Assembly (NCBI GenBank): GCA_051294905.1
Contig: CM119372.1
Span: 30,256,001-30,320,000 of the forward strand
DNA length: 64,000 nucleotides
Direction of reading: 5' to 3'
Origin: Botryllus schlosseri
Lineage: Eukaryota
This document shows, one piece after another, positions 13,061 through 53,826 of the stretch (its first letter is position 1; each line of letters begins with the position of its first letter). Below the pieces are notes generated by a model. That model was not told the DNA's origin, did no database searches, and saw only the letters and a list, made by a program, of their open reading frames with translations. Position numbers and translations under genes: made by a program.

Positions 13061-14338
13061 TTAGCTAACATTTTCCCGGCAAACAGGGAGGGGATGAAAG
13101 AACAAGAACATAATTGCCAGGGGTGGTCAAATTTGTATGCGAAGTTATTCAAGTAGAAGTATTGACGTGAAATTCTACTCAAGTACGAGTAAAAGTAGTA
13201 TGTTTATTAACTGCTCAAAACTACTTCACGTAGAAGTAGAATTATTGTTGCAAATATCAAAAAAATCATTCCACATCTTTGCTTACTCGAACGTTGCTAC
13301 CAAACTGGTCCTTTCCAGCTGTTTTGCGACAGATAAAGAGAGTATCTGCTCAATTAAATTAAACTCAGGTCAGTCTCTTTTCTACCTCAGAATTGTCAAT
13401 ATATTGATATGATTATAATCACAAAACCAGTCATACCTGTGATGCATATTTCACTGACATTTTCGACCGAGAATTCAGGCAGATATGGCTATGCTTTAGT
13501 TTGAAAGGCTGATGGAGACCACTGGACCACAATTCTTTATATAACTTCCTAACTTGTATGTATCTCCATAGAATTTGCCCCGTCGGAGATTTCAGGTATT
13601 TTTATCATGGAATTTCGCGCGGTCCGAGTATATCATAATATCCGAATATAGGTTGAAATGAAATAATAATTGAGAATATTTACCTTGATTAAATGAGGTG
13701 GGACGGATCATAAATAGTAGGGATGGTGTGAACCTCTGAAAGGTTCAGGTTCGTGTGAACGCGAACCTTTTTGAAAGGTTCTGTGTGAACGCGAACGTGA
13801 ACCTCGTGACGTCATGTGACGTCATATTGCTAATTTAAACCCTATATTTCAATGAAGTGATAGACTATATTAATGTACGCGATATACCTAGCGATGACTC
13901 GTGCCACATAATGCCAAAATGCTGAAGTAGGCCCTACATATTGACGTTTTAAACGTCGCTAAATGTATCAACTGAGGCAATGAAATGATATAATAATCCC
14001 ATAAAATCAATATCTTCCGTCTCTTTGCCAACAATTTCGATGCGGACTTGCCAGCGAATATAAGCTTACGCCTGAACGGTCTAGGCCAGACCGGACAATG
14101 TCTTCGGCGTCTGAGTATTGTTATACGTGGATATTGAGCAGAGTGCTGAACGGGTTTCTATACTTGCTACCGACATTACCCCATTAACAAGTTATACAGC
14201 AGTAGCCAACACCCTAATTGCACGGATTTGCTTATTGTGATACAGTAAACATATGAAGTCATGATTGACCCGTACGCCCGCTAGATTTCTACACCAGAAA
14301 ACGATATCACTCTCACTGATTGGTTGAATAGGCATCAT

Positions 14339-15701
14339 CAGGCCGTGTTATTTTTGGCATATGCCAAAACAGCCAAAAATAACTTATTTTTGGCATTTTT
14401 CGATTTTTATTTTTGGCAGTTTTGGCATCGTCCTCTAAATAGATAGTTTCAGCTTCGAATTAGTCACAAAACCGCTTTATTCGGGCTAGTTTGTCAAATG
14501 ACACCACAAAATGTGCAGCATCCACGTATAATCAGTGCCAATAAACAATAAGAAGAAGAAAAAACCTAACGATTTCATAGGTTAATAATATCAAACGAAA
14601 CCACAAAATGTGCAGTATCCGTCGGAATCGGTGCCAATAAGCAGAAAAAAGAAAGAAAAGCCTAACAACACGCTCAACAGCTCATTGTTACAGCTGTTGA
14701 ATAGACTTCAATCGTTCGCACTGTAACAGTGCTTCCAAACGTGAGTCAGCTAAGGTTCTCCTAAATTCATTTCTCGCCCAGCGAATCTGGGAAATGTCGG
14801 CTTCAACGGTAGCCGTTGAGGGAAAGAATGTTGCCAGTCATCAACAAAAGGTTTTCAGAGCTTCAAAATCTTTGGAGGGCCGAACCGGCTTCCATGCATC
14901 ATGAAAAGAGATCACTTCGCCAGTGCCATCGATCTCATCACGGAAAGAATTTTCTTCCCGATCCTTTTCCAGGAGTTTCCTGTGCTGTCTCTCAACACAT
15001 TCTATTTAGTATAGCCCGACTATCATTTCTCCGTCACTCTACCGATATATTTTCGGAGGACTTCTGTCACTTCAGGTGGCTTTAATATTACCAACTCGCA
15101 AGGAAAAGTCCTGGGAAGGTTAGCTTGTTTAAGTAAGAACATTGACGCAACAAGACTGTCTGGCAAAACGAGCCTATGCAGCTCAGAAATAGCCAGACAG
15201 TTTGTTGCGTCACAATGTTCAACTCGATCACAATGCAAAAATCGTGGTGGATTTGGGGGGTTCCAGTTCCATGAGCAGAATATAATTTATAATTTAATAA
15301 TCAGTACTGCGGCAGCTTCTCATTGATACCTGTTTTATCAAATTTAGCGCTCGACAAGCCGGTCAAAAATGGTCGCAAAATTGCCTTTGGACAAATGGAA
15401 AGTATTACGTAAACCAAATGCTGTCAGCCGTTCAATCTCGCTGTGCCCACACCATTTAGGACACCATGCTTTCACCCCGAATGGGTGGGCTGGACCCAGA
15501 TCAAGAAACCTGCCTTTCACAAACGCTCTTCTCGCTTGTAACGCGGTCCTGTTAACACAACACCATGAACGAAATGCACTATTTGGCAGGCCGTGTTATT
15601 TTTGGCATATGCCAAAAATTGCTTATTTTTGGCATTTTCAAATTTTTATTTTTGGCAGTTTTGGCATCTGGCTCCTGAAATGCCAAAAATAACACGGCCT
15701 G
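14339..15701. mobile_element. Composite hAT-type insert (family E ends)
   Basis: TIR CAGGCCGTGTTATTTTTGGCAT; TSD GGCATCAT/GGCACCAT; the empty site is visible in the family C copy at about 53425. Contains a complete 115-bp mini-element at 15587-15701. Confidence 0.85.
14688..15010 (-). pseudogene. hAT transposase dimerisation-domain remnant
   Basis: FEALKTFC**LATFFPSTATVEADISQIRWARNEFRRTLADSRLEALLQC resembles the hAT C-terminal dimerisation domain; two in-frame stops. Confidence 0.7.
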
Positions 15702-16927
15702 GGCACCATTCGCTGACTACATGCAGTGTATTCACAAACGGAAAGCTTGATATTTCGAGCAAACTTTTGTAACAAGGCAAGTAAAATTTTTGAGATTGTC
15801 AAGGTGCATGCTCGTTTAGTGTTGATTGTTTATGCTGCCAGCGCCATGCATAGAGTGGTTCGCAGTTGAATTGCAATAAATGTGAACCAAAGATTTTAGA
15901 ATGAAGTAAAGGTTTTAATATATGAAAAAGGTTCACAGGGCAGAACCTACCAAGGTTCTGTTGTGAACGCGAACCTCAAAATTTCCGAGGTTCACACACA
16001 GAACGCGAACGTGAACCTCACGTTCACACCATCCCTAATAGATAGATTAATCTATCCTGACTAACCGGTTTTCGTCTGTTTCGAAGCCGTCAACAAGGTT
16101 GCAGAAGAATTTACGATATGGGGTAGCACCATCCGCTGGTACGAGAATGAGATTAACACCAAATCTACAACGGACGCGAATCCCCAGATACCGAGGTCAA
16201 ATGGAATGACTTCGCAGTTGCTCCAATAAGATTAAATATTCTTTAAAACACAGTGTTCGTTGTCAAGTAATTCATAAATAATTTTGATATACATTCCAAG
16301 AACATGTGTTGCCAAGGGATATCATCTCCAGCTGGGCTGTAAGGTGTTTAAAATGAGGCTGATATGACGTCTAAGCAGTGCGGAGCAGTTCCTTCAAGTA
16401 TACCGATGAGAATTTAAGGAAGATTTCAGCTCGGTAATCTCGACGACATTTTCCTGGCCAAACTCTGCAGTCTGCAGTTATTGCCAGCCTTTACAATACA
16501 AATGGGAGAGCCTTATTCACCATTGTCAACCCGGAAATGGTTATGACCTGCGCCGGTGTGATTAATTATCAAGTTCATTGTTGAACGCAGTGATTTAGCA
16601 TTGATTGGTGATCATGATCAGGCATCCATTGTTGCGGGTGATAGATACGTTTATGAGAACTCGACTCAGGAGTTCAATTGCAAATTCTAACCCTGTAGTG
16701 TCATCATTCCCTAAATTTTACAAGTCTTGCGTAAACCATGAGGAAAGAAACAACACGAAAACAATACGCATATTTGAATACGCGATAAAATGCGTCAATT
16801 TCTAATCAGGTTGAACCTCTCGAGCAAAATGTCGAAACGCATGTGCATTGTGCAACGATTAAAGAGCCGCAATCAAAGGCTGATGGAGCTCAACCCTGTC
16901 ATACGCACTCGGGTAGTCCTGCTATAG

Positions 16928-23809: not shown

Positions 23810-24949
23810 CTACTTAGGTGGCTTTTGGCCCATGCTACTCCAAGTTTTACTTGTGAATAGATTTTGCGATTTCAATTGTTTTGTTAATGTCTGTCCGAGA
23901 TTCATGAAGGGCAATTGACCGACTCCACCATTCCGTCCTACAGGAATAAGCATGAGGGTGCTGGTCGCAGGCTTGTAAGCGTGCAATTTGCTCCCTTTCA
24001 TGGAGGCTGCGATGTTCTTAGCCACGATGTCCCTATGTCCCTCCGCAGCTAACACCATTTTTTCTTCATCTATGTCTACTATGTCACCGATAGCGAAGAT
24101 ATTCTCGGCACCTTCCACTCGTAAAAATTTGTCGACTTTTATCAAGCCATTGTCTTTCACCGCACCTCCGAGAGCGTCCTTGAAGGCAGCTGTATTTGGC
24201 CTACCACCGGTGCAGCGTATCACCATGTCGCATTTGATTTCCTTGTCACTCGTTGTTTTCACTACTTGGTCTTTGACGCATTTGTTCAACTCAAGATCTT
24301 GGAGGTTACTTACTCTTTCGTTAAGCATCAGCTCGATGCCCTTGCTCAACATCAACTTTTTGAGTGACTTCTGCACTTTCGAATTCACCCTGGCGGAGGC
24401 TAAGGTCTCATTCGCGTGAATGAGAATTATTTTCTTGTCCGGGTAATCAGTCTTCAATTCGCCGGCCATTTCCACTCCGACCGGTCCGCCTCCCACACAA
24501 ACGATAGTTCGGGATTCTTGAATGGTACTGTTGAGGTTCTTGTAATGTTTCTTGGTCTCTTCCTGAGTAGATTGAGGGTATTCCGGTGACAGTTGAGCTG
24601 GAAACGAGCCGCTAACGCCAGTGGCAAGTACCAAATGAGAATATGTGATTTCTTGGCCATTGTCCAGCGTCACCGAGTTTCTCTCTCTGTTAATTTGCGT
24701 CACTCTGCCTTGGACAAAGTTCTCCCCGAATGTATGTCTCAGTGGGATCATGAGACTCGGGACGAAGTCTGGCTCGACCGCTGCCCTTAGCGCCCCCACC
24801 GCATGGAACATGAAGTCGTAGGGATTGATAATTTTCACGTTTTCAGTGCTAAGAAGCTTCCGGCCGAGTGTGGCACCACCGTATCCCGCACCCACAATGA
24901 CAATGCTGGCATTTTCTGAACGGTGAATATTTGATGCTCCGTTACCCAT
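23810..24949 (-). CDS. AIFM2: Ferroptosis suppressor protein 1 / AIF-M2-like oxidoreductase, paralog B (379 aa, intronless CDS)
   Basis: Same motifs as paralog A (MGNGAS, GAGYGG, LATG, GGGPVGVE, AIGD); colinear without gaps. Confidence 0.95.
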   Translation of the reverse strand: MGNGASNIHRSENASIVIVGAGYGGATLGRKLLSTENVKIINPYDFMFHAVGALRAAVEPDFVPSLMIPLRHTFGENFVQGRVTQINRERNSVTLDNGQEITYSHLVLATGVSGSFPAQLSPEYPQSTQEETKKHYKNLNSTIQESRTIVCVGGGPVGVEMAGELKTDYPDKKIILIHANETLASARVNSKVQKSLKKLMLSKGIELMLNERVSNLQDLELNKCVKDQVVKTTSDKEIKCDMVIRCTGGRPNTAAFKDALGGAVKDNGLIKVDKFLRVEGAENIFAIGDIVDIDEEKMVLAAEGHRDIVAKNIAASMKGSKLHAYKPATSTLMLIPVGRNGGVGQLPFMNLGQTLTKQLKSQNLFTSKTWSSMGQKPPK

Positions 24950-37200: not shown

Positions 37201-39315
37201 AAAAAGAAAATGTATTGACAAACTCCCACTCATCAACAATTTATAACCCTTCTGATCAGCATGCTGTAGCCTGTTGACAACTGCCTTGTCAGTTTTCTGC
37301 ACTATTATAAGAGTAATTTGCAGATTAGGTCTTAAATTCTAAACAATAAGGTGGGCTCATCTCATTTTTAGTAAATTATTCAGTGTTACTGGTGAAGTTA
37401 CCTATTTGCAGAAGGTATTTCTGCCAACATTTGCTCAGGCTCTGTGTTTTCGAGGGGGGAGAGAGTATTTTATTTTAACTCAGTCTGGACTAGGTAGCAG
37501 ACAATACAGCAATAATGGCGATACAGAGTACACTTCACGATATTTGTTATGATAAGACTATGCTCATGCGGATTACTGAGCCTTTGACAGTGGAAAAACA
37601 ATATTTTAAGCATATGATGTTCCACCGATGGTCATAAATTACACGTCTTTGCATTTAAGCTAAAAATATGCTTAACAATATTCAGAACTGACGAAAGATT
37701 GCAGATAACTGGATAATTTTGCTAATTTCTGAGTATTTTTGTTTCGTTATGATTGGTAGTCAGTTTATTTCAATTGTAGATCATAAATCACTCAATAGTA
37801 TGGGCCCAAACTCCAAAAACTAAAGCAATGAGGTCTGGATATTCAAGTATTACGAGTTTTGAAATCACCAGAGTACTTTGTTGAACCCTAGTGGCCTTCT
37901 GAGTTGTGGGCATATAGGCATTAGGGCCAAATCTAACTTGGCTGAGTATAGTTCAATTACGTGAGGCCATTTTTGAAGACATGACATGTACAAATAATAG
38001 ATAGTGACTGTTTTGGTTGAAAACCTTCCACTAAGATAATATTGAGTGTGTGTGTGTGTGAGAGAGAGAGAGATGAGAACCGAAATGGTGGCATTTATCA
38101 ACTATTTTCTAGACCCACTATGAATAATTACCAGTAGAAGTAAACGGATGTGAAGACCAACTCCAAACAATGACCACCTATGTTGTAAGAGAACCGCCGT
38201 GCGTTTATTATAAAAAGGTATGGTAATCATCTTTAAAAAATACTTTATTTCTTTATTTGTTCATTTATCTATAGAAACTTGTTCGATATGATGAAGTTTT
38301 TTTGAAGCATTTCTTTTTATGGTATAAATATATTTCTTGAGCTTGGGCATAGAGCCGATATTACGGTGTTCGCTGCTTGGGGGTATAGTGCCTGGTATCG
38401 GCCAGCGGAACCGTCTATTGCGCGACCCAATAGTAACCCTTTTTCATTAAAACCGTAGAACATCTTAAGAATCACCTATGAAAATGAATTCTTACCTTGT
38501 TGGACAGCATCCAACCGCAAAGTGATGTGAAATTGTAATTATGTATATAAGGTATATATTTGTGTGAGTCGTACGTTTGTCCCTACCTTATGGGGTTGGT
38601 AATGTAGTAATGAGGTATATATGAAGTAGGTTGTGAGGAAATCTCATTTTTTGACACCCATGGTTACGCGAGTAGACGCTGCATTTCAACCACGATAGGA
38701 AGGAAGGAGGGACAAATATATCGTCGCAAAACAATGTATATAAAGTATAAGTGTTACAGTATGTATATATAAGCACCCACGAAAAAAATTGATAAAAGAA
38801 TTTGAAAAAAATTAAACACTTGCGGCGGATGAAACATACAATAAGGAAATTTGCCATGTATAAATATAGTAATATATAAAACGAATATATTATGATAAAA
38901 TGACCCTATGGGTTAACAAATTGTTATCTAACATAACTTAGATAGGATATGAAGTTGGAGTCGGACTTGGGATTGGATTTGGGCTCGGAATCGAATTCAG
39001 AGCCCGACGTGAATCATGTGATCTGAAAACTTTTCGTGTATAAATTTATGATTAATTTACACCAATTATGAAATATTAGTAGTGATAACATGTGTCCACG
39101 ATTACGCTGCAAGGAATTCGAGATCGAGCACTCAGTCTGGGTACCACAAAAATATATGTCTCTCGATCAAGGACTGAAATCGCTGAGATCACTAAGATTC
39201 CTGATGATGACACATACGTTATCAGGAGTATCAGAGTATCTGTGTGACATTGGCCGATGAGTCTAATTTAAGCTCCGCCATTGGAAACAATGATATGACT
39301 TCGCCACTGGTGACA

Positions 39316-40099
39316 GCACAGGACTGGAAATGCTAGATTATCCAGAGAAGCCTGGAAGACTAAATTAATAGGCACAGGACTGGAAATGATAGATTATCCA
39401 GAGAAGCCTGGAAGACTAAATTAATAGGCACAGGACTGAAAATGATAGATTATCCAGAGAAGCCTGGAAGACTAAATTAATAGGCACAGGACTGGAAATG
39501 ATAGATTATCCAGAGAAGCCTGGAAGACTAAATTAATAGGCACAGGACTGGAAATGCTAGATTATCCAGAGAAGCCTGGAAGACTAAATTAATAGGCACA
39601 GGACTGGAAATGATAGATTATCCAGAGAAGCCTGGAAGACTAAATTAATAGGCACAGGACTGGAAATGCTAGATTATCCAGAGAAGCCTGGAAGACTAAA
39701 TTAAAAGGCACAGGACTGGAAATGCTAGATTATCCAGAGAAGCCTGGAAGAATAAATTAATAGGCACAGGACTGGAAATGCTAGATTATCCAGAGAAGCC
39801 TGGAAGACTAAATTAATAGGCACAGGACTGGAAATGCTAGATTATCCAGAGAAGCCTGGAAGACTAAATTAATAGGCACAGGACTGGAAATGCTAGATTA
39901 TCCAGAGAAGCCTGGAAGACTAAATTAATAGGCACAGGACTGGAAATGCTAGATTATCCAGAGAAGCCTGGAAGACTAAATTAATAGGGACAGGACTGGA
40001 ATGCTAGATTAACCAGAGAAGCCTGGAAGACTAAGTTAATGGGCACGGGACTAAAAATGCTAGATTTTTCAGAGAAGCCTAGAAAACTAAATTGATAGG
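39316..40099. repeat. 56-bp tandem array, 14 copies
   Basis: Unit GCACAGGACTGGAAATGCTAGATTATCCAGAGAAGCCTGGAAGACTAAATTAATAG at exact 56-bp spacing from 39316; last two copies decayed. Confidence 0.97.
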
Positions 40100-40714
40100 G
40101 CTGACTGATAAAGTTTTAGGGTACACTCAATGATTATAGGCATCCCTATCTGGTTTAAATAAACTATGTTTATTAAAGAAATAATATATAACCTTAATAA
40201 ATAGATATATATGATAGCCTATATGTGTGGTAATAATGATGTATATACAATCGGAATATAATAGTATGGTAATTAGGTTAGAAAAGACCCTAGAACACAT
40301 AGGAAAGTGTACTACAAATAATATGATCTGAAAAATGGCAAATAAATTGGCCCCATCCACACATTTGTTTTCCGAAACAGATGTGTCGATGATCAAGAAC
40401 CACGTTAGTCATAGGTCCGCCCTGTCGACACATTCGTTTTACGAAGCGGGTGTGTCCACCGTTTGTTATATCGATATCTGTACATGATTTGGGACAATAT
40501 CATTTTAACGAGTTAATTTTTGTGCTATAGACGTAGGCATAAATTGCGTCATGAAGTACAAGTGTACATTCTCATTTTCGAAATTATAAGACAGATCAAA
40601 TACGATATCAAGATATTCTACACACCCGTGTAGTTAAGCTATCGTATTAAGCGATGACGGACATATTAATTCATTCCGCACGAGTTTGTCGAAAGCCGGC
40701 TCCGTCAAGCACTA

Positions 40715-41047
40715 ATGTACCGAGAGGACAACGAGTTATACAAGAAGATGGAATCACCACTCCACGATATCGCGATTCTCCTGGACAAAACGGCACCTAT
40801 ATTCCACCTTGCAATCGCCGAAATAGAAACGCAAATACGCGTCGCTCGAACCAGATTGTCAGAGGAAGATGCTAAGAGGATACAGTTGGACAACATAAGA
40901 TTTAGCAGAAGACACATAGAAAGGAGCCACCAGCAGACGATGAAATATTCATTTCACTGTGAACGATGTCGTACAAGACCCTTTGATACTACTCGATATA
41001 GTGCCAGTCGATTCAAATACACAGACTGCGCAACAGTCAAAGAGTAG
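40715..41047 (+). CDS. Helical 110-aa ORF, possibly the frameshifted N-terminal part of the RING gene
   Basis: Open frame with coiled-coil-like IAEIETQIRVARTRLSEEDAKR; overlaps the RING ORF, which lies in the +1 frame. Confidence 0.4.
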   Translation: MYREDNELYKKMESPLHDIAILLDKTAPIFHLAIAEIETQIRVARTRLSEEDAKRIQLDNIRFSRRHIERSHQQTMKYSFHCERCRTRPFDTTRYSASRFKYTDCATVKE

Positions 41048-41306
41048 GCTGGGCAACTCTGTTTATGCTAGAAACAGAATGGGGACGCCATCAATATTAG
41101 AAATAGCATATGTTGAAGAAATTGCTGAGAATCTGATGGTCATACAAGAAACCATACTTTGCAAACAATACAAAAATAATAGGAGCGAAATTACCCTGAT
41201 CCCCTGTGGACATCTGGGTCTGTGTCAAGAATGTTCGTCCGATGCTGAGCGCTGCATATTCTGCTATGGGAAAATATCGCAAAAGATCAAAGTGTATGGA
41301 GCTTGA
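40959..41306 (+). pseudogene. C-terminal IAP/Mdm2/neuralized-type C3HC4 RING, second Cys replaced by Tyr
   Basis: CKQY-x9-PCGH-x2-LC-x2-C-x6-C-x2-C..I..KIKVY*; TAC is one base from TGC. Confidence 0.75.
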
Positions 41307-42204: not shown

Positions 42205-42314
42205 TTTTCGGCAGGATAGGCCGTCACATGAATTATATGTGTAAACCAACCTTGGAGCTGCTTTTCGGCAGGACAGGCCGTCGCATGAATTATATGCGTA
42301 AACAAACCTTGGAG
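42205..42314. repeat. Two-copy 57-bp direct repeat
   Basis: TTTTCGGCAGGAYAGGCCGTCRCATGAATTATATGYGTAAACMAACCTTGGAG at 42205 and 42262. Confidence 0.9.
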
Positions 42315-42699: not shown

Positions 42700-42720
42700 T
42701 GGAGGCACCAAGCTGGGATT
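42700..42720 (+). promoter_or_regulatory. Primer-binding site complementary to the tRNA-Thr(AGU) 3' end
   Basis: TGGAGGCACC(AA)GCTGGGATT versus the recalled reverse complement of vertebrate tRNA-Thr-AGT plus CCA, TGGAGGCACCGCTGGGATT; 2-nt bulge; 440 nt before gag. Confidence 0.7.
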
Positions 42721-42751
42721 ATTACTTCCGGTGTAGCACGTTGACCTATAA

Positions 42752-42961
42752 ATGTGTTCAAAGACGACCATCGTTAAAACTGCATTGGTCGTGGCCCTGA
42801 TTGCGTCTGTAATTTCATTGTTAGTTACGTTGTCACCAGTATATCTACATTTGGTACCGGGGTTTTCTTCAACTACAGTTCCGATTGGAAACGGAAGACC
42901 TAACAACGGAGTTACAACATCGTCCCCAACTCTTATTGGCTCGCAAAACATATCTGCATGA
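42752..42961 (+). CDS. ORF0: N-terminal signal/anchor plus Ser/Thr-rich tail (69 aa; the frame stays open 52 more codons after TGA)
   Basis: Hydrophobic ALVVALIASVISLLVTL; frame reopens to TAA at 43118-43120. Confidence 0.4.
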   Translation: MCSKTTIVKTALVVALIASVISLLVTLSPVYLHLVPGFSSTTVPIGNGRPNNGVTTSSPTLIGSQNISA

Positions 42962-43141
42962 CGCCAATTTATCATTACTAAAGACTCGCTTTCTAAACTT
43001 TTGGAGTTCGAGACTAACGACCACAACTCATCACTCGGAACAACACCGCGGCCTACCTTGGACGACCCGACCATCTCCAGCGTAAAGCAGGCCCTCGAAA
43101 ACTCTACTACGGGTCTATAAATCAAATCTATTACTATTGCC

Positions 43142-46087
43142 ATGCGAAGAATCTTGAAACTATTTAAAAAGAAGAAACCAACGGAGGCATCGGCGGAGCT
43201 AAAGCAGGGAATCCGACTGCTTAAATATACCCAAAAGCGTCACGAAGATTTGCGAGACCACGAGAGGCAATACGCTAAAGATGTGGCCGACCAGACAAGA
43301 GTCCTACAGGAGGTCAAAACGACCCTGCCTGAGGCAGTGAAGGAGCTGGAAAAAGCAAGAAAAGACGTCCGGCGGGCTCAAGCTGACCTGAAGGCCGTTT
43401 GTGACGCCACTTCAAAAATTACTAGAAAGGTTTCCCCTGACGTATTAAACGAGATCTTGCAGACTGAATTCGAGCTGGGTAAAGCCTATACGCAGGTGGT
43501 AGGAGAGAAACCGCCTCCTCCTTCCGCCCTGGCTGTCGTACCCTCAGCGCCTCTCCCGGCCTATGATCCACCAGCTATCCGTATGGTCAGGGAGACTCAA
43601 CCTATGCCCACCTTCACCGTGAAAAAGGGGCTGCATTGTCATACAGTAACGGCGGTCTACCCTACGCACCCAGACGCGAAGGCTGATGCCCCATCTCGAC
43701 CGACACCGGTTGCCCGTTCACTGATGGCTCCAATCTTTAGAACAAAAGGGAATATGCACCCGGCGATGAAGACCAAAGATGCTGCTAACACGCCCATGGC
43801 ATATTGGACACCTACGGGAGTGGCGACAGGAGGACCGATGAGACTGGAACGCGAAACAGACTCTGAATTGGACAGTAAACATCTGCCCTCATTCCGGAAA
43901 CTGGTGTCGAGATCTCGAGATGCGAAGGGTCAGCGGCGGGACATTGACAAGTTGGGTGATGCTGGGACACGAAGTAGTCGGGCAAGAAAGTCGCCGAGCG
44001 ACGCTGAGCACGTCATTTTCCGTGGAGAAGGGGAGGAGTATGATGAACGAGACTCGGAGGGTCAACCAGAAGATTCTGATTCTGAAAGTGCGACGACATC
44101 CCGACTGCAGAGGCTTGTACAGCAAATGGAATCCACACAGGACACCCTCCGGGAAGCTACTCGAAATGCTTTCCTTGGAGATAGTGGCGCTTCCCGAGAA
44201 ATTCTCCGTGGTCCTGAGTATTACGATGCGGGCTATCTTCCAAATGGCCGGGGGAATCCTGGAATGCCGCGTTTCGCATCTACTCCAGATGACAGTGATG
44301 ATGGCCGCCCAATTCAGCCGCTCTCGCGACAGATGGAGGTAATAGTAAACCCAACGCTAACTGCACCTGTTAGATTTCAGTCCGAAAAGGAAACGATACA
44401 GTTGATAATGGATCCGGGGGACATGCCTCTTCTCAAATGGATGGAGAACACAATGAGGCGAATTCACCACGGTGAAGGTAATACTGATGCTGATATAATA
44501 TTGATGAATGCAATGCAAAAGAAATTGAAGAATGCGGGGCGTTACAAACAAGCTGATCAACTTGGAAACTTCTTCAACACAAACTCAGGAAACGCCAGCT
44601 GGGAATCCGTTATGAGGTCGCTATCACTTTCCAACCCGCAAGGAATTGTGAACAATGAAAGAATTCTCAACGATTTCCGAAGAAATTATCATTGGGAAGA
44701 TGAACCCCTTCCTCTACTTAACAGCGCCCTGAAACCACTAGAGATAGACATGGACGATCTAGTTTTGGATAATCCGGACGGGCTGCGACTCTTCCGCAAT
44801 TTGAGACAGCAGCTGCCGGAAGCACTCAGGTTGATTATTCGAGGGTGGGAAGAACACACCTGGCGGAAAGTCGCAGAAGAACTACAACTGTTCTGGAATT
44901 CGGAATTCCAAGATGAACAGGAATCGAGTCCGACGTCTCAGAGAACCCGAAGAACGCAGAAGAACGAGTCGCCCTTGCCGCCTGTACATATCTATAATGT
45001 ACAGCCAGCTGGGCCTGTGGTACATAGCTATCCGACTCACCCTAACGGAGATGGACAACGGGAAATACCTCTACAGCCTACTTCCTCGTCATCACATCTT
45101 CCGCCGGAATTCGACGCAACGCCACCTCGACCTCCCAGAATCATCCCTTTACAGCCTATCAAGAATATAGGACAGGTTACACAACTACGCCGAAATCCTG
45201 TTCGCAACGCAAGATTAAACCGGCCCCCTACTAACGTATCGAGTGGTATCGAGCCAGGCAGACGAGCGCAAACTACTAGGAAAATGCTGGAACGAAAACA
45301 GAATGTACAAGGCGCCTCTGCCGGACCCGATACCCAACCTCTACATATTTCAGGGTCAGCACAATCCGGTCAACAACCAGGAACTTCAAGCCAAAGAAGC
45401 CCACGAACGGAAGGAACACAAGATTCTGGAGTGGGACCAGATAATACGCAAATCACTCCGTCAAACAGTCAGGAGGCTCGCCACATCGCGGAAAGCCAAG
45501 GTGAGAGGTACAATTTCCTTAGAAATGGTAATATATTTGCCCCATTAGGTTTGTATTTGAATCCTTCCCAGGGCCAGGCCCTTTCGGTATGTTATTATTG
45601 TAAGGCTCCCGGACACCAATCCCGGAATTGCATTGCCAAGTTTATCCTTTGGCTAAACAATGAGGTACTCTCTAGAGATAGCGAATTGGGGTGGGCAATC
45701 CGTAAACGGGTCCGACCGGTACCGCAGCGTATTAAGGAATCCGCTGAACGCAACTGGCGTCCGTTCCTTACTACCCATGGATTATTGACGATTTCAGACC
45801 TTGATCGGTATCTCATATCCCATGGTTCTCCCCCGTTGGCAGAAAGAACGAATCTATGTGAGGCCTATTATGATAGTATACCTAAAAACAGAGATAGAAC
45901 CCACTGGCACGATAGGGGCCAATGGGGTCCCAGGGGGCCACCCGCGAATCCAATTCCTAATAACGGCCAAGTAAACTGGATTGCGCCTTCATATAGACAA
46001 GAGCCGCGCCAATATGCCACCTCTTTCTGGACAGATGAGGAATTAGAACAAGGCTTACGCGTTTCAAAAAACGGTTGGGGGCGCTGA
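43142..46087 (+). CDS. gag: Gag-like polyprotein (981 aa)
   Basis: Basic N-terminus and coiled coil; PSAP at aa 134-137; helical Trp-containing capsid-like block at about aa 420-590; CYYCKAPGHQSRNC (CX2CX4HX4C) at 45590-45631. Confidence 0.85.
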   Translation: MRRILKLFKKKKPTEASAELKQGIRLLKYTQKRHEDLRDHERQYAKDVADQTRVLQEVKTTLPEAVKELEKARKDVRRAQADLKAVCDATSKITRKVSPDVLNEILQTEFELGKAYTQVVGEKPPPPSALAVVPSAPLPAYDPPAIRMVRETQPMPTFTVKKGLHCHTVTAVYPTHPDAKADAPSRPTPVARSLMAPIFRTKGNMHPAMKTKDAANTPMAYWTPTGVATGGPMRLERETDSELDSKHLPSFRKLVSRSRDAKGQRRDIDKLGDAGTRSSRARKSPSDAEHVIFRGEGEEYDERDSEGQPEDSDSESATTSRLQRLVQQMESTQDTLREATRNAFLGDSGASREILRGPEYYDAGYLPNGRGNPGMPRFASTPDDSDDGRPIQPLSRQMEVIVNPTLTAPVRFQSEKETIQLIMDPGDMPLLKWMENTMRRIHHGEGNTDADIILMNAMQKKLKNAGRYKQADQLGNFFNTNSGNASWESVMRSLSLSNPQGIVNNERILNDFRRNYHWEDEPLPLLNSALKPLEIDMDDLVLDNPDGLRLFRNLRQQLPEALRLIIRGWEEHTWRKVAEELQLFWNSEFQDEQESSPTSQRTRRTQKNESPLPPVHIYNVQPAGPVVHSYPTHPNGDGQREIPLQPTSSSSHLPPEFDATPPRPPRIIPLQPIKNIGQVTQLRRNPVRNARLNRPPTNVSSGIEPGRRAQTTRKMLERKQNVQGASAGPDTQPLHISGSAQSGQQPGTSSQRSPRTEGTQDSGVGPDNTQITPSNSQEARHIAESQGERYNFLRNGNIFAPLGLYLNPSQGQALSVCYYCKAPGHQSRNCIAKFILWLNNEVLSRDSELGWAIRKRVRPVPQRIKESAERNWRPFLTTHGLLTISDLDRYLISHGSPPLAERTNLCEAYYDSIPKNRDRTHWHDRGQWGPRGPPANPIPNNGQVNWIAPSYRQEPRQYATSFWTDEELEQGLRVSKNGWGR

Positions 46088-46108
46088 TTGATCCGGTAAA
46101 TCAGCTCC
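46066..46108 (+). promoter_or_regulatory. -1 programmed ribosomal frameshift signal
   Basis: A_AAA_AAC (46066-46072) in gag phase; after a 5-nt spacer, hairpin GGGG(C)GCUGAUU-loop-AAUCAGCUCCC; the -1 frame is open into ORF2. Confidence 0.85.
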
Positions 46109-48612
46109 CTGACACAATATTACCCCAACATGTTAAAACTGTACATAATGCCTCGTTACCTTTGTTTACATTCCTTGATTCACCGGACAACCCCCTACAA
46201 CCGTATTTCGCAGAATTATTCGGTGGGCAACTTTTATACCTAGTGGATACAAACACAGACACTAAATTTCTAGCCGATACTGGCAGTATCCCCAATTTGA
46301 TTATGAAAAGCGTAGTAAAAAATAAATATCCGAGAAGCTGGGCTGAACGACAGCCACTTGATATGAAATTGCGCGGAATAGGAGGCTCGTCCCGAGTCGA
46401 CTCTCTAGTAATAGTACCTCTTGACGGATTGCAAGTTCCATTTGCAACTGGTAAAGGAGTTCCTCTTAATATAGTGGGGCTAAAATGGATTGACAAAGTA
46501 CAACAATTACCGAGTATAGATACTGAATTTAAAACTCCATCTACTGTTAATGAAGAATTGTCATTGGCAACACTACATAGTATGGCTTTACGCGATAAAA
46601 AGGAAGGAACCAGAATTGAAAACAGTCCTTGCAAAACTGTGACCAAGGATGGGTTGGTGAAAGCTGCAGAACAGACAAGCGTCGAGACGGCAAGGGCCGC
46701 TGATGCTGGCGTCGAAGTGGCAAGGGCCGCTGACGCATACGTTGGGTCGGTAAACACCGCTGACGTTACAATAGAAAATAGAGACTCTTTAGGTGCCGAG
46801 CAAGGAAGGCCTGCTGACACCTGCCAAAATCGCGCCGAGCGAGGAAGTCCCGCTGACGCAAATGGAGTGCAAACTAATGAAGGAGGCTCCAATGATGAAG
46901 GCAAGATGAGCGTCGAGTTGGCAAGGGCCGCTGACGCAAACGTTGGGTCGGTTAACACCGCTGGCGTTACAATAAATCAAAGAGACTCTTTAGGTGCCGA
47001 GCCAGGAAGTCCTGCTGACACCAGTCTAATTCGTGCCGAGCGAGGAAGTCCCGCTGACGCGAATGGGGGTCAAACTAATCAAGAAGACCCCGAGGATGTA
47101 GGCAAAGCTGCTTGTCCAGATGACGGTAAGGCATCAGTGCGGAATGATCCCACCACAACCGCCGTCATGCCTACTTCACTCAATAATAGTTCCAACGCAG
47201 CTACTACTCATTATCCGGATATGAGTCCGGATGTGGCTAAAGAGGAGTCTGGAGATTTTAGGATGCAAGTCTCTCCAGAACAAGGGCCCCCGTCGGATCA
47301 AAGCTCCGGCGGCGTGACGTTAGGCGTGGGCACGCGCCGAGATCAGAGGTTAACACGAATAGGTAGGGAAGTCCCGCTGACGGAAAAAACCCTCGCCCTC
47401 TCCCCACCAACACCAGAACCCCGATTACCGCATAAGCCAAACAGAAAGGTAAACGGTCCGGTAAACACGTACGTCTTACAAGAGGGAACCAGTCCAGAGG
47501 TAAAAACTGAAGTTGAGCTCCTGTGCGCACAATCAGTAGAGCTAGCAAAATGGCCATATAAGCCCCTTGATTCAGCTACGCCAGAAAATACCATTATTGC
47601 CGACAACGTATGGCCAGAGGTCTATAAACCTTTTGCGACTGAGCGGGAAGATCTGCCATGCCATCTTAGCGCGCCCCAATCTATGAAGTACCAGTGCGAC
47701 AGGGAACTAGAATACCCATCAACTAAGCCATTTGTCTCTGGTCCCTCTAATTTGAAAGGGGGAAGCCATACCAAGGATTTACAAGAAGCTGTAACCGTGT
47801 GGTCAGCAAATATGGTGTCATGCGTGATGAAGCCAATAACGGAGAAGTACCAGCAGCACATAAAAGAACATGGCTGGGCTGATAGGAAAAATACAACAGC
47901 TATGGAGGTCTACATTTCTCTCGGAACAATGCAAGTATTCACGTCTGATGGATTGTCCAGATCATATTGGGTAGAAATGGCGGTAGGAGATGACGATCCC
48001 CGTGCTGCTAATCCGAAAAGGAAAGAAGTAACCCATATTTTGTGTGAATCTCAACAAGAAAGGGTGCAACGAACATTGATGTACCATTACAGGCATGCAG
48101 AGTGCCAAGACTCGACAAATGGATACCACCAATGGGAAAGCATCCATGCGATTGTACAAGGCAAACTGAAATTAAATTTTGAAATGACCGAAATAAAAGA
48201 CGTCTTGATAAGTTGCGATAGGGCTGTAGTCACAAGCTACGGTCTGGCCGCGCCACACCGACATACGAAAGGGTCGACTCCCCCCTACAAGGAGCACGGA
48301 GGTGACGGTATGCTATGTCACATGGCGACTGAATTGAACGCAAAAGTTTTCATGAATGAGGAGATCAAAAGGATGAACAGAAAGTTTGTTCATCCTAGCA
48401 AGTCAAAGACGACAAAGATGCTAGGCCGGAAGATTGTTATCAGCGTGAATGCGGCGTATCTGAAGACTGAAGGGGTGAAATTGCTACAATCTCCAAATCC
48501 CGATGTTGTGATTGTGTTGAACTTTGAGGAATTTGGCTGCACAATGAATTCAAACGGACAAAATCTAAACCCAGTAATTAGATATATGCTGAATCAGCAG
48601 GAGTGCATTTAA
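46075..48612 (+). CDS. Frameshift ORF2: retropepsin, repetitive linker, unknown domain and Tpt1/KptA-like 2'-phosphotransferase
   Basis: FLADTGS (DTG at 46276), flap GIGG, NIVGLKWI. C-terminal 190 aa has YRH, DRA, HRHT, LCHMAT, RMNRKFVHPS and VISVNAAYLKTEGVKLLQSPN. No YxDD or DDE motif. Confidence 0.8.
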   Translation: MGALIDPVNQLPDTILPQHVKTVHNASLPLFTFLDSPDNPLQPYFAELFGGQLLYLVDTNTDTKFLADTGSIPNLIMKSVVKNKYPRSWAERQPLDMKLRGIGGSSRVDSLVIVPLDGLQVPFATGKGVPLNIVGLKWIDKVQQLPSIDTEFKTPSTVNEELSLATLHSMALRDKKEGTRIENSPCKTVTKDGLVKAAEQTSVETARAADAGVEVARAADAYVGSVNTADVTIENRDSLGAEQGRPADTCQNRAERGSPADANGVQTNEGGSNDEGKMSVELARAADANVGSVNTAGVTINQRDSLGAEPGSPADTSLIRAERGSPADANGGQTNQEDPEDVGKAACPDDGKASVRNDPTTTAVMPTSLNNSSNAATTHYPDMSPDVAKEESGDFRMQVSPEQGPPSDQSSGGVTLGVGTRRDQRLTRIGREVPLTEKTLALSPPTPEPRLPHKPNRKVNGPVNTYVLQEGTSPEVKTEVELLCAQSVELAKWPYKPLDSATPENTIIADNVWPEVYKPFATEREDLPCHLSAPQSMKYQCDRELEYPSTKPFVSGPSNLKGGSHTKDLQEAVTVWSANMVSCVMKPITEKYQQHIKEHGWADRKNTTAMEVYISLGTMQVFTSDGLSRSYWVEMAVGDDDPRAANPKRKEVTHILCESQQERVQRTLMYHYRHAECQDSTNGYHQWESIHAIVQGKLKLNFEMTEIKDVLISCDRAVVTSYGLAAPHRHTKGSTPPYKEHGGDGMLCHMATELNAKVFMNEEIKRMNRKFVHPSKSKTTKMLGRKIVISVNAAYLKTEGVKLLQSPNPDVVIVLNFEEFGCTMNSNGQNLNPVIRYMLNQQECI

Positions 48613-52521: not shown

Positions 52522-53826
52522 TAGGGATGGTGTGAACCTCTGAAAGGTTCTGGTTCGTGTGAACGCGAACCTTTTCGAAAGGTTCTGTGTGAACGCGAAC
52601 GTGAACCTCATGACGTCACGTGACGTCATATTGCTAATTTCAACCCTTCATTTCAATTATGTAATTGCCTACATTATGTATATGTATTGTACAATATATG
52701 TACTGTACAGTGTACACGATACCTAGCGACGACTCGGGCCACATAATGGCACAGTGCTGAAGTAGGCTACATATTGACGTTTTAAACGTCGCCAAATGTA
52801 TCAAATGAGGCAATCAAATGATATATTAATTCCATAAAATCAAGATCTTCCGTCGCTTTGCCAACAATTTCGACGAGGACTTGCCAGGGAATATAAGCTT
52901 ACGCCTCAACGGTCTCGGCCAGACCGAACAATGTATTCGGCGCCTGCGTATTGCTACATGGATATTGAGCAGAGTGTAAAACGGGTTTCTATACTTGCTA
53001 CCGATATTGCCACACTATCAATAGCGCAGTGGTATAATCCGCGGATGCAACGCCAATGGGTTCGGGTTCGAGTCCGACCGAGGTCGACTTCCGAATTCCG
53101 ATACCTAAGTGTTGGAGGTTTACCTAGGCTCCTCCTCGCCACCTCATCCGCGTCCGTGGGCCGTGCTATAAATCGACAGATACGGAAAATAAGAAGAATA
53201 TCGGCCTGGTGTAAATGACCATAGTAGTCGACAAACACCATGAATACCCCAAAACAAACAAACAAAACCACACTATCAAGTTATACAACAGTAGCAACAT
53301 CCCAATCGCACGGATTTGGGATTTGGTGTTTATGATACAGTTTACATATTAAATCACGATTGACCCCGTACGCCTGCTAGATTTTTACATCAGAAAACGA
53401 TATCAATCTCATTGATTGGTTTAATAAGCATCATTCGCTGACTACATGCAGTGTATTTCGCTCTTGATGTTATGCGATTGAGGTTTAAGCTCACAGCAAA
53501 GAGTCACTAAATATTCACAGACGGAAAGCTGTATATTTCGAGCAAGCTTTGCAACAACGGAAGTAAAATTTCTCAGATTGTCAAGGTACATATGCTCGTT
53601 TAGTCGATAGTCGATTGCTTATGCTGCCAGCGCCATGCATAGAGTGGCCCGCAGTTGAAATGCAATAAATTTAAACCAAAGATGCTATAATGAAGGGAAA
53701 ATTGCAATATATGAAAAAGGTTCACAGTGCAGAACCTACCAAGGTTCTGTTGTGAACGCGAACCTCAAAATTTCCGAGGTTCACACACAGAACGCGAACA
53801 TGAACCTCGCGTTCACACCATCCCTA
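52522..53826 (+). mobile_element. hAT MITE family C with nested SINE
   Basis: TIR TAGGGATGGTGTGAAC; degenerate TSD GTGATTA. Confidence 0.9.
53022..53267 (+). mobile_element. tRNA-derived SINE S2
   Basis: A box TAGCGCAGTGG, B box GGTTCGAGTCC, (AAAC)n tail; 12-bp TSD CCACACTATCAA at 53010 and 53268. Confidence 0.92.

What the first reader, a model, noticed from the sequence alone, without database searches (positions are those of the whole stretch)
42700..48612. Gag-Pro retroelement-like unit with a Tpt1-like enzyme where RT/RNaseH/integrase should be
Seen: PBS, ORF0, intact 981-aa Gag with CCHC knuckle, -1 frameshift, retropepsin, then about 750 aa with no RT (YxDD) or integrase (HHCC, DDE) motif and a clean stop at 48612. 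No further long ORF follows. Both long ORFs are stop-free while neighbouring elements are decayed. Established: PEG10 is a domesticated Gag-(-1)-Pro gene without functional RT/IN. Inference: either a non-autonomous element that supplies capsid, protease and an RNA-end enzyme and borrows Pol in trans, or a convergently domesticated PEG10-like capsid gene. I do not know of this architecture being described.
Basis: partly seen in the sequence, partly recalled or inferred. Interest (0 to 1): 0.93.

Follow-up and report, generated by a model that had tools for sequence, protein, structure and literature searches.

The report
RT-deleted retroelement copy with Tpt1-bearing Pol
This is a copy, still open in both reading frames, of an unusual marine-invertebrate retroelement; the copy has lost its reverse transcriptase by internal deletion, and the family, which seems undescribed, ends its Pol in an RNA 2'-phosphotransferase (Tpt1) domain where an integrase normally sits.

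Summary
The observation largely holds. ORF1 (43142-46087, 981 aa, CCHC knuckle) and a -1 frame ending at 48612 are real and stop-free. The overlap carries a slippery heptamer and a hairpin that are conserved, with compensatory changes, in six related loci. The -1 frame encodes a retropepsin (DTG motif, Foldseek match) and a C-terminal Tpt1/KptA domain (family profile versus solved Tpt1, E 1.6e-18) with its catalytic Arg-His-Arg-Arg positions kept.

The interpretation needs correcting. Tpt1 does not replace RT. Three full-length relatives at 25-35% identity encode PR-RT-RNaseH-Tpt1 in one ORF. A relative at about 47% identity continues into RT exactly where this copy stops. The window copy keeps RT and RNase H stubs and lacks about 330-390 residues through two in-frame deletions.

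What is unusual is the family. Its RT is Ty3-like, yet no LTRs and no integrase were found in any locus, and Tpt1 ends Pol. One lineage adds an endonuclease domain and an alphavirus-E1-like ORF. I found no description of this in the literature searched.

A capsid fold, the PBS and ORF0 could not be verified. Whether this copy is dead, mobilised in trans or domesticated cannot be decided from one window.

The parts
43142..46087 (+). ORF1, Gag-like protein (981 aa): N-terminal coiled coil, central conserved helical domain, C-terminal conserved domain with one CCHC knuckle
   Evidence: Open frame. Homologs P0001 (53% identity) and P0002 (48%) cover 99% of it, with conserved blocks separated by variable linkers. 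It is homologous to the ORFs lying just upstream of pol in L001, L002 and L003. A capsid fold is not shown.
43178..43501 (+). Predicted long helices / coiled coil at the Gag N-terminus (residues about 13-120)
   Evidence: Secondary structure of the model, where pLDDT is 55-75 in the first part only. The block is conserved in P0001 and P0002.
44354..44941 (+). Central conserved all-helical Gag domain (residues about 405-600), the candidate capsid-like domain
   Evidence: This is the most conserved block among the window ORF1, P0001 and P0002. It matches the L002 and L001 Gag ORFs. About 8 helices are predicted, but at low confidence. No match to any Gag/CA family.
45587..45631 (+). CCHC zinc knuckle (nucleocapsid-like)
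   Evidence: Pfam zf-CCHC E 5e-4, found in 6 of 7 Gag homologs. The family profile gives weak matches to retroviral nucleocapsid chains.
46066..46072 (+). Slippery heptamer A_AAA_AAC in the zero-frame register, inside the 49-nt ORF1/ORF2 overlap (46039-46087)
   Evidence: In six loci a heptamer ending in A_AAC lies exactly 20 nt upstream of an invariant CCGGU.
46074..46113 (+). Frameshift-stimulating hairpin. The family consensus 9-bp stem is 46079-46087 paired with 46101-46109; the 13-nt loop holds the invariant CCGGU.
   Evidence: Local fold -20.2 kcal/mol, z -2.85, 0 of 200 shuffles as stable. On six loci, 96% of cells are paired and 5 of 9 pairs show compensatory change. 0 of 500 shuffles reach this, and slid controls give 33-65% paired.
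46039..48612 (+). pol (-1 frame), a broken gene: PR, expanded disordered linker, RT and RNase H stubs, Tpt1. Breaks: 2 in-frame internal deletions removing most of the RT core and thumb and most of RNase H (about 330-390 residues relative to full-length relatives); 1 small in-frame gap at the end of the Tpt1 domain; 0 stops; 0 frameshifts.
46192..46569 (+). Retropepsin-like aspartic protease domain (DTG active-site motif)
   Evidence: Motifs conserved in 11 sequences. The family profile hits only HIV-1 protease chains, and weakly (E 0.012). pLDDT is above 90. Foldseek matches HIV-1, FIV, EIAV, HTLV and XMRV proteases (E about 1e-4, target TM 0.57, 96 of 99 residues).
46709..47105 (+). In-frame tandem duplication (2 x 201 nt = 67 codons, 86% identical) inside a predicted-disordered linker of about 290 aa between PR and the RT stub
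   Evidence: Linker pLDDT is about 33. Differences between the two copies fall 8/8/11 by codon position, and 17 differing codons are nonsynonymous against 5 synonymous, so the stretch evolves roughly neutrally. In relatives this linker is about 20-110 aa.
48055..48519 (+). Tpt1/KptA-type RNA 2'-phosphotransferase domain with the Arg-His, Arg and Arg catalytic positions present
   Evidence: Family alignment A1. Profile versus solved structures: E 1.6e-18 over residues 4-174 of a 180-residue Tpt1/KptA. Foldseek E 3.5e-7. Pfam PTS_2-RNA is above its cut-off in relatives P0007, P0008, P0012, P0015 and P0003. The window copy alone scores 16.4 bits.

Best explanation
The unit (about 42.5-48.7 kb; coding part 43142-48612) is an internally deleted copy of a Ty3-like gag-pol retroelement family found in tunicates and other marine eukaryotes. 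Its reading frames are intact.

In the family, Pol is made by -1 ribosomal frameshifting at a heptamer ending in A_AAC, six nucleotides before a conserved hairpin. Pol reads PR-RT-RNaseH-Tpt1. The Tpt1 domain sits where integrase sits in Ty3/gypsy elements. No integrase and no LTRs are detectable in any locus examined.

The window copy has lost the RT catalytic core and most of RNase H through two in-frame deletions, and it carries an expanded disordered linker. It can therefore still encode a Gag-like protein and a Gag-Pol fusion with protease and a Tpt1 domain that looks catalytically complete. It cannot copy its own RNA.

Shown: the ORFs, motifs, folds, homologies and deletions, and the conserved frameshift cassette.

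Inferred: that frameshifting and proteolysis actually occur, and that the copy is either a recent dead derivative or a non-autonomous passenger depending on RT from intact relatives.

Inferred for the family: the Tpt1 domain acts with NAD+ on a nucleic-acid phosphate of the element. It would either remove a 2'-phosphate left at an RNA ligation junction, so that the RNA can serve as a template, or ADP-ribosylate a 5'-phosphate end of RNA or cDNA. Both are known Tpt1/KptA activities. The data do not say which one applies.
For: - ORFs and stop counts.
- Relatives P0007, P0009 and P0034 have RVT_1 + RT_RNaseH_2 + PTS_2-RNA in a single ORF, each preceded by a Gag ORF homologous to ORF1.
- Window ORF2 matches them in the PR, N-terminal RT, a small RT-core piece, the RNase H end and Tpt1 only. 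It has no [YF]xDD motif, whereas the relatives have YIDD or YMDD.
- P0005/L004 (about 47% identity) continues into RT.
- Tpt1 membership. Protease.
- RT-RH of P0007 is nearest to Ty3 RT and a caulimovirus RT among solved structures (E 1e-22).
- Frameshift cassette conserved with covariation in six loci.
- No flanking direct or inverted repeats around the unit or in L001, L003 or L007. No rve or tyrosine-recombinase Pfam match in any called gene of the loci.
- The family is multicopy elsewhere: two copies 99.9% identical in L002, and 15 members above 90% identity on 15 contigs.
- Likely host: the neighbouring FSP1/AIFM2-like gene is closest to Styela clava (52% identity). One family member is a Styela clava protein.
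Against: - Both deletions are in frame and neither ORF has a stop. That is also what selection on an RT-less product would give. By chance, two deletions are both in frame about 1 time in 9.
- The RT-bearing relatives are distant (47% identity or less), so the RT-less state could be old and lineage-wide rather than a recent accident.
- No other copy from the source genome could be examined. Copy number, age, termini and target-site duplications are therefore unknown.
- The capsid nature of ORF1 rests on position and the CCHC knuckle only.
- 'No LTR' is a negative result from seven loci and one window.
Confidence: 0.75

Rival explanations
1. A propagating non-autonomous lineage. The RT-less structure arose before insertion. 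Copies like this one make Gag, protease and Tpt1 and are copied by the RT of autonomous relatives in the same genome. This is a special case of the best explanation, not a contradiction of it.
For: Both ORFs are intact and both deletions are in frame. The frameshift cassette is intact. The Tpt1 catalytic positions are kept. The two copies of the 67-codon duplication have diverged by 14% with the frame still open, which suggests the linker expansion predates this insertion.
Against: No second copy with the same deletions was found in any database reachable here. The window Tpt1 domain scores lower than its relatives and lacks the last conserved motif, which could mean relaxed constraint. The expected number of stops from the divergence in the linker is only about 1, so its openness carries little weight (inference).
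Confidence: 0.3
2. A PEG10-like domesticated host gene: a Gag-(-1)-Pro(-Tpt1) gene kept by the host after loss of RT.
For: The architecture (Gag with CCHC, -1 frameshift, protease, no RT core) has the same form as PEG10. The ORFs are intact while the surrounding DNA is full of stops. No terminal repeats flank it.
Against: RT and RNase H stubs remain. The linker evolves neutrally. Relatives behave as multicopy mobile elements. Lack of LTRs is a family trait, not a sign of domestication. No ortholog or synteny information exists. The exact protein is absent from the public gene collection.
Confidence: 0.08
3. A genuinely RT-free autonomous design in which Tpt1 substitutes for RT/RNase H/integrase.
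For: Only the bare absence of RT and IN motifs in ORF2.
Against: Relatives have RT-RH upstream of the same Tpt1 domain. Stubs of RT and RNase H remain in the window copy. Tpt1 chemistry (phosphate transfer to NAD+) cannot make DNA (established knowledge of the family).
Confidence: 0.01
4. An assembly artefact: the RT/RH region was collapsed or skipped during assembly and the real locus is full length.
For: None directly. Deletions inside repeated elements are a known assembly failure (general knowledge).
Against: There is no N or gap in the window. Two separate deletions both keep the frame. No other family copy in the window could seed a chimeric join.
Confidence: 0.04

Closest known systems
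Ty3/gypsy LTR retrotransposons (Metaviridae)
   Same: Gag with a CCHC knuckle. Pol is reached by -1 frameshifting. Domain order is PR-RT-RNase H in full-length relatives. The RT-RH of the relative P0007 is closest to Ty3 RT among solved structures (E 1e-22). Pfam RT_RNaseH_2 matches.
   Different: No LTRs in the window or in seven related loci. No integrase anywhere. Pol ends in a Tpt1 domain. This copy also lacks the RT core and RNase H.
PEG10 and other domesticated Ty3/gypsy gag-pro genes
   Same: Gag-like ORF with CCHC, a -1 frameshift into a retropepsin, and no working RT.
   Different: Stubs of RT and RNase H and a Tpt1 domain follow the protease. Relatives are multicopy elements. Conservation at a syntenic locus and purifying selection were not testable. 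PEG10 itself did not come back as a hit in any search.
Caulimoviridae and their endogenous copies (pararetroviruses)
   Same: Reverse-transcribing elements with a CCHC capsid protein and PR-RT-RH, without integrase and without LTRs. A caulimovirus RT scores as well as Ty3 against P0007. Head-to-tail copies as in L002 are also typical of endogenous pararetroviruses (general knowledge).
   Different: They are plant viruses with a movement protein, and none is known to carry Tpt1. Here the hosts are marine animals, and the extra ORFs are different (an E1-like glycoprotein in L002, a CUB protein in L001 and L007). No phylogeny was made.
Cellular and viral Tpt1/KptA RNA 2'-phosphotransferases
   Same: The whole domain aligns (E 1.6e-18). 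The fold matches. The Arg-His, Arg and Arg positions and the GH(S/T), LYH(G/M)T and RxxxH motifs are shared. Free-standing Tpt1 genes exist in a baculovirus and in giant viruses.
   Different: Here the domain is fused to the C-terminus of a retroelement Pol. It is preceded by a family-specific segment that begins at the RNase H end motif. The best matches are short archaeal and bacterial enzymes rather than the longer eukaryotic one.
Internally deleted, non-autonomous derivatives of retroelements and defective proviruses
   Same: The regulatory signals and some genes are kept, the polymerase is lost by internal deletion, and the copy depends on intact relatives.
   Different: No evidence here that the deleted form has been copied. 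The usual markers (LTRs, target-site duplication, sister copies) are missing or untestable.

Membership tests
Tpt1/KptA RNA 2'-phosphotransferase (Pfam PF01885) | Significant sequence similarity over the whole domain | tested here: met
   Family profile A1 versus solved Tpt1/KptA: E 1.6e-18 over residues 4-174 of 180. Pfam is above its cut-off in five relatives. The window copy alone is below the cut-off (16.4 against 26 bits).
Tpt1/KptA RNA 2'-phosphotransferase (Pfam PF01885) | Two-lobed Tpt1 fold | tested here: met
   Foldseek top hits are Tpt1/KptA structures (E 3.5e-7, about 170 aligned columns). Model pLDDT is 67-93 in this domain.
Tpt1/KptA RNA 2'-phosphotransferase (Pfam PF01885) | Catalytic Arg-His-Arg-Arg tetrad. 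Its assignment to the alignment columns rests on established knowledge of Tpt1. | tested here: met
   All four positions are present in the window copy. Across the family they are invariant (the third position, Arg) or nearly so: one relative has Gln at the first Arg.
Tpt1/KptA RNA 2'-phosphotransferase (Pfam PF01885) | NAD+-dependent removal of a 2'-phosphate, or ADP-ribosylation of a 5'-phosphate | not testable with these tools
   Biochemical property; sequence evidence only.
Retropepsin (peptidase family A2) | D-T/S-G active-site motif in a hydrophobic context, a flap, and a C-terminal hhG motif | tested here: met
   FLADTGS, GxGG and NIxG are conserved in 11 sequences.
Retropepsin (peptidase family A2) | Retropepsin fold | tested here: met
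   pLDDT above 90. Foldseek matches many retroviral proteases (E about 1e-4, target TM 0.57, 96 of 99 residues).
Retropepsin (peptidase family A2) | Match to a curated sequence model (RVP and related) | tested here: not met
   No Pfam protease family at E 0.01 or better for the window ORF2 or ten relatives. The family profile versus the PDB gives only weak HIV-1 protease hits (E 0.012).
Ty3/gypsy LTR retrotransposon | Long terminal repeats flanking the internal region | tested here: not met
   No flank-to-flank repeat around the unit, and none in L001, L003 or L007. L002 is ambiguous because its copies lie head to tail.
Ty3/gypsy LTR retrotransposon | Pol with PR-RT-RNase H-integrase | tested here: not met
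   PR-RT-RH is present in relatives. No integrase (rve) was found in any Pol or neighbouring called gene. The window copy also lacks the RT core and RNase H.
Ty3/gypsy LTR retrotransposon | Gag with a capsid fold and a nucleocapsid | tested here: inconclusive
   The CCHC knuckle is present. The capsid fold is untested because the model was poor (mean pLDDT 34.5). No Gag/CA family matched.
Ty3/gypsy LTR retrotransposon | tRNA primer-binding site and polypurine tract next to the LTRs | not testable with these tools
   There are no LTRs to anchor them and no tRNA genes in the window or the loci.
PEG10-like domesticated gag-pro gene | Gag-(-1 frameshift)-protease without functional RT | tested here: met
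PEG10-like domesticated gag-pro gene | Single syntenic ortholog kept under purifying selection across species | not testable with these tools
   The source genome and its relatives are not searchable here. The exact protein is not on record. DNA of the nearest relatives was unavailable.
Tyrosine-recombinase retroelements (DIRS/Ngaro) | Tyrosine recombinase ORF; inverted or split terminal repeats | tested here: not met
   No recombinase family in any called gene or downstream ORF. No inverted repeats in L001-L003 or around the unit.
Non-LTR (APE-type) retrotransposons | Endonuclease/exonuclease/phosphatase domain together with a LINE-type RT | tested here: not met
   A complete Exo_endo_phos domain follows Tpt1 only in the L002 lineage (E 1.9e-18). 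The RT there is Ty3-like. The window copy has no such domain.

The most novel reading that the evidence does not exclude
The window copy is a defective member of a previously undescribed lineage of reverse-transcribing elements in tunicates and other marine eukaryotes. The lineage has a Ty3-like Gag-PR-RT-RNase H but no LTRs and no integrase, and an NAD+-dependent Tpt1 domain is a constant C-terminal part of Pol. Some lineages add an endonuclease domain and an alphavirus-E1-like class II glycoprotein, or three further conserved ORFs. This would imply a replication or integration route that depends on 2'-phosphate removal or ADP-ribosyl capping of nucleic-acid ends, which is not known for any retroelement.
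Probability: 0.45. Interest if true: 0.85.

Novelty: new variant of a known kind. Interest (0 to 1): 0.68.

Why it matters
As a single locus this is an ordinary event: a retroelement copy that lost its polymerase by deletion. It matters as an entry point to the family.

- A Ty3-like Pol that ends in a catalytically complete Tpt1 domain, with no integrase and no LTRs, does not fit the current retroelement classes.
- It raises a concrete question: which phosphate on the element's RNA or cDNA needs an NAD+-dependent phosphotransferase?
- The family also supplies a compact, phylogenetically supported -1 frameshift cassette.
- In one lineage it links a Ty3-like Pol to an alphavirus-E1-like glycoprotein and an endonuclease domain. 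This bears on how retroelements acquire envelope and integration modules.

Tried and rejected
- Structure of ORF1 from a 3-sequence alignment: mean pLDDT 34.5, unusable, so the capsid fold stays untested.
I did not send them by another route and re-ran with permitted rows only.
- Pfam and PDB profile searches for a Gag/CA family: only the zinc knuckle matched.
- Self-cleaving ribozymes, which would fit a Tpt1-dependent RNA-ligation cycle: no Rfam family in the window at 41.5-50.5 kb at E 1 or better, and none in L001-L004 at gathering score. That idea has no support.
- PBS: no tRNA genes to compare with.
- More copies:
  - metagenome and viral contig scans gave only L005, a 98% identical copy of L003;
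  - the word-indexed search with the RNase H-Tpt1 part of P0007 found only itself;
  - exact look-ups of ORF1 and of the Styela protein found nothing;
  - DNA of the nearest relatives (Logan runs) was not available.
- Remnants of the endonuclease domain or of envelope-like ORFs downstream of 48612: none.
- Other family fragments in the window: none.
- Literature: no paper linking Tpt1/KptA to a retroelement Pol. A 2026 survey of envelope-carrying Ty3/gypsy elements in metazoans does not mention it.
- Termini of full-length relatives: the 3' end of the L007-type element could be placed only roughly and shows no poly(A) or repeat signature.


Full report
**1. What is in the sequence**

The two long frames exist as described. 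ORF1 is 43142-46087 (981 aa). A second frame ends at 48612 (845 aa from the first listed start codon). Nothing of 80 aa or more follows on the + strand up to 51 kb. Both frames have zero stops, while the other two + frames of the same spans have 38-69. G+C rises from about 0.38 to 0.47-0.49 across the unit and falls again after 48.7 kb. The window contains no N.

ORF2 is in the -1 frame relative to ORF1. Its frame is open from 46039, which gives a 49-nt overlap holding A_AAA_AAC in zero-frame register at 46066-46072.

**2. Gag-like ORF1**

Pfam finds only a CCHC zinc knuckle, at residues 816-830 (E 5e-4). Only two full-length homologs exist in 5.8 billion clustered proteins. P0001 (53% identity) and P0002 (48%) both come from one sequencing run. 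They share three well-conserved blocks separated by variable linkers: an N-terminal coiled coil, a central helical domain, and a C-terminal domain with the knuckle. The ORFs that lie just upstream of pol in three distant relatives are homologous to the central and C-terminal blocks.

The 'Gag' label therefore rests on position, on the knuckle (6 of 7 homologs) and on weak nucleocapsid matches. A capsid fold is not shown. The AlphaFold model was unusable (mean pLDDT 34.5), and no Gag/CA family matched.

**3. The frameshift signal is real and conserved**

In the window the heptamer is followed by a stable hairpin (-20.2 kcal/mol, z -2.85).

The same cassette is present at the gag/pol junction of L001, L002, L004, L006 and L007. 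In each, a heptamer ending in A_AAC lies exactly 20 nt upstream of an invariant CCGGU. The consensus 9-bp stem starts 6 nt after the heptamer. On it, 96% of cells pair and 5 of 9 pairs show compensatory changes. No shuffle out of 500 reaches these values, and sliding the partners by one to three columns drops pairing to 33-65%.

Across these loci the proteins are only 25-47% identical, so this is good comparative evidence for programmed -1 frameshifting.

**4. Protease**

The N-terminal part of ORF2 carries FLADTGS, a GxGG flap and an NIxG motif, all conserved in 11 sequences. No Pfam protease model matches. The family profile finds only HIV-1 protease chains, and weakly (E 0.012). The domain is nevertheless modelled at pLDDT above 90. 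Foldseek returns dozens of retroviral proteases (E about 1e-4, target TM 0.57, 96 of 99 residues).

**5. Tpt1 domain**

The window copy alone is a sub-threshold Pfam hit (16.4 bits against a cut-off of 26; PDB E 0.65). An exhaustive HMMER search of 1.84 billion representatives found 31 relatives.

- The C-terminal domains align well.
- Their profile matches solved Tpt1/KptA enzymes over essentially the whole chain (E 1.6e-18).
- The top Foldseek hits for the ORF2 model are Tpt1/KptA (E 3.5e-7).
- The columns that align with the Tpt1 Arg-His, Arg and Arg catalytic residues are conserved across the family and present in the window copy. The assignment of the tetrad rests on established knowledge of Tpt1.
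- The last conserved motif of the domain is not recognisable in the window copy, which has one small in-frame gap there.

**6. Why there is no RT: deletion, not design**

Three full-length relatives carry RVT_1, RT_RNaseH_2 and PTS_2-RNA in a single ORF, with YIDD or YMDD motifs. They are P0007 (locus L003), P0009 (L001) and P0034 (L002), mutually 33-37% identical and 25-35% identical to ORF2 across their matched stretches.

Window ORF2 matches them in five places only: the protease; a piece of about 110 aa that in the relatives lies just N-terminal of the Pfam RT match; a piece of about 40 aa of the RT core (E 7.7e-7 against the L004 RT); the C-terminal RNase H motif; and Tpt1. A closer relative, P0005/L004 (about 47% identity), runs on into RT where the window copy stops matching.

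The break count for pol is:
- two in-frame internal deletions, together about 330-390 residues;
- one small in-frame gap at the Tpt1 end;
- no stops;
- no frameshifts.

The local match bounds printed bracket them and are not repeated here.

The linker between the protease and the RT stub is expanded to about 290 predicted-disordered residues, against about 20-110 in relatives. It contains a 67-codon in-frame tandem duplication whose two copies are 86% identical. Their differences are spread 8/8/11 over the codon positions, and 17 differing codons are nonsynonymous against 5 synonymous, so the stretch evolves close to neutrally.

**7. What the family is**

- *RT type.* The RT-RH of P0007 is nearest to Ty3 RT and to a caulimovirus RT among solved structures (both E about 1e-22).
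- *Missing parts.* No locus shows LTRs or inverted terminal repeats. None has an integrase or recombinase match in Pol or in neighbouring genes.
- *L002.* It holds two copies 99.9% identical, head to tail with a 9.28-kb period, one of them truncated at the 5' side. Its Pol continues after Tpt1 into a complete endonuclease/exonuclease/phosphatase domain (E 1.9e-18). The next ORF matches the alphavirus E1 glycoprotein model over most of its length (E 5e-19).
- *L001 and L007.* Both have three collinear, conserved ORFs downstream of pol, one of them with CUB domains. The L007 element spans at least 13 kb without LTRs.
- *Copy number.* One subfamily has 15 members above 90% identity on 15 large contigs.

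The family is therefore mobile or virus-like, diverse and rare in public data.

- *Hosts.* One member is a Styela clava protein. The FSP1/AIFM2-like gene next to the unit is closest to Styela clava (52%), then Ptychodera (42%) and Ciona (37%). The window is probably from a tunicate.
- *Window copy.* It has none of the downstream ORFs and no endonuclease remnant. Its stop at 48612 falls where Pol ends in the L001 and L003 lineages.

**8. Mechanism**

*Shown:* coding capacity for a Gag-like protein and, through the conserved frameshift cassette, a Gag-Pol fusion with an apparently intact protease and Tpt1 domain but no polymerase.

*Inferred:* the copy cannot replicate on its own. It is either a recently deleted dead copy or a passenger that relies on RT-bearing relatives. 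Nothing in one window can separate these.

*Family-level role of Tpt1 (inference only).* Tpt1/KptA enzymes use NAD+ either to remove an internal RNA 2'-phosphate left by the 5'-phosphate RNA-ligase pathway, or to ADP-ribosylate 5'-phosphate ends of RNA and DNA. This is established knowledge, and several of the matching solved structures are DNA and ADP-ribose complexes.

In an element without integrase and LTRs, either activity could act on the template RNA or on cDNA ends. I lean slightly to the first, which would make a ligated RNA readable by RT. A search for self-cleaving ribozymes, which would create such junctions, found none. The step therefore remains open.

**9. Comparison and novelty**

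The unit works like a defective Ty3-type gag-pol element, but it fails the membership tests for LTR retrotransposons (no LTRs, no integrase). It has the same form as PEG10, without any evidence of domestication. In lacking integrase and LTRs the family resembles pararetroviruses, but its hosts and extra genes differ.

I found no paper linking Tpt1 to a retroelement Pol. A 2026 survey of envelope-carrying Ty3/gypsy elements across metazoans, tunicates included, does not mention it. This is absence from a partial library, not proof of novelty.

**10. Verdict**

The 'new architecture' reading is wrong for this copy and half right for the family. Interest is moderate to high because of the family, not the locus.

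- The consensus lines printed by the alignment tools were not used.
It was re-run only with permitted rows.

Noticed in passing
window 46079-46109; L001 9971-10028; L002 19272-19329; L004 1593-1650; L006 and L007 9983-10040: The 13-nt loop of the frameshift hairpin holds an invariant CCGGU in all six loci. The proline codon inside it is CCG in 6 of 6, although the proteins are only 25-47% identical. This suggests an RNA-level constraint on a palindromic CCGG loop, perhaps a loop-loop contact or a long-range pairing.
   Followed up: partly
L002 10001-13369 and 13320-16007: In one relative, Pol continues after Tpt1 into a complete endonuclease/exonuclease/phosphatase domain (E 1.9e-18). The next ORF (895 aa) matches the alphavirus E1 glycoprotein model over positions 98-491 of 504 (E 5e-19). 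This would be a class II fusion-protein-like gene in a Ty3-like element.
   Followed up: partly
L001 13037-18051; L007 13566-16907: Three collinear ORFs downstream of pol are conserved between two samples (E 1.6e-8, 6e-24 and 4e-82): a CUB-domain protein, then proteins of 432 aa and 751 aa without family matches. They are therefore part of that lineage's element. The L007 element spans at least 13 kb without LTRs.
   Followed up: partly
window 8465-9604 (-) and 23810-24949 (-): Two intronless 379-aa genes for FSP1/AIFM2-like pyridine-nucleotide-disulphide oxidoreductases lie 15.3 kb apart, about 76% identical over the first 300 nt compared. The closest named ortholog is from Styela clava (52%).
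   Followed up: partly
window 39204-40119: A tandem array of a 56-nt unit, about 14-16 copies, 96% matching, lies 3 kb upstream of the unit.
   Followed up: no
window 40959-41306 (+): An open frame with a C-terminal RING finger (zf-C3HC4_3, E 5.5e-9), probably the last exon of a host gene, lies on the same strand about 1.8 kb upstream of ORF1.
   Followed up: no
window 13718-16037 and 52522-53826: A dispersed repeat in three collinear pieces, 91-92% identical, about 38.8 kb apart and with indels between the pieces. It is unrelated to the unit and not identified.
   Followed up: no
window 46101-46958 (-): A 285-aa antisense open frame lies over the low-complexity linker of pol. It probably reflects the stop-poor composition of that stretch rather than a gene.
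   Followed up: no
Logan runs SRR25569773, SRR25569783 and SRR25569784 (no DNA held): All the closest relatives of the unit come from these runs: Gag at 48-53% identity and Tpt1 fragments at 76-83%. At least three diverged lineages are present, one of them with a 567-aa ORF continuing after the protease-bearing ORF (which also holds the start of RT). One Gag contig has a 110-aa ORF overlapping the Gag start.
   Followed up: partly
window 42205-42314: A 57-nt unit repeated 1.9 times (92% matching) lies just upstream of the rise in G+C that marks the unit. Its relation to the element's 5' end is unknown.
   Followed up: no
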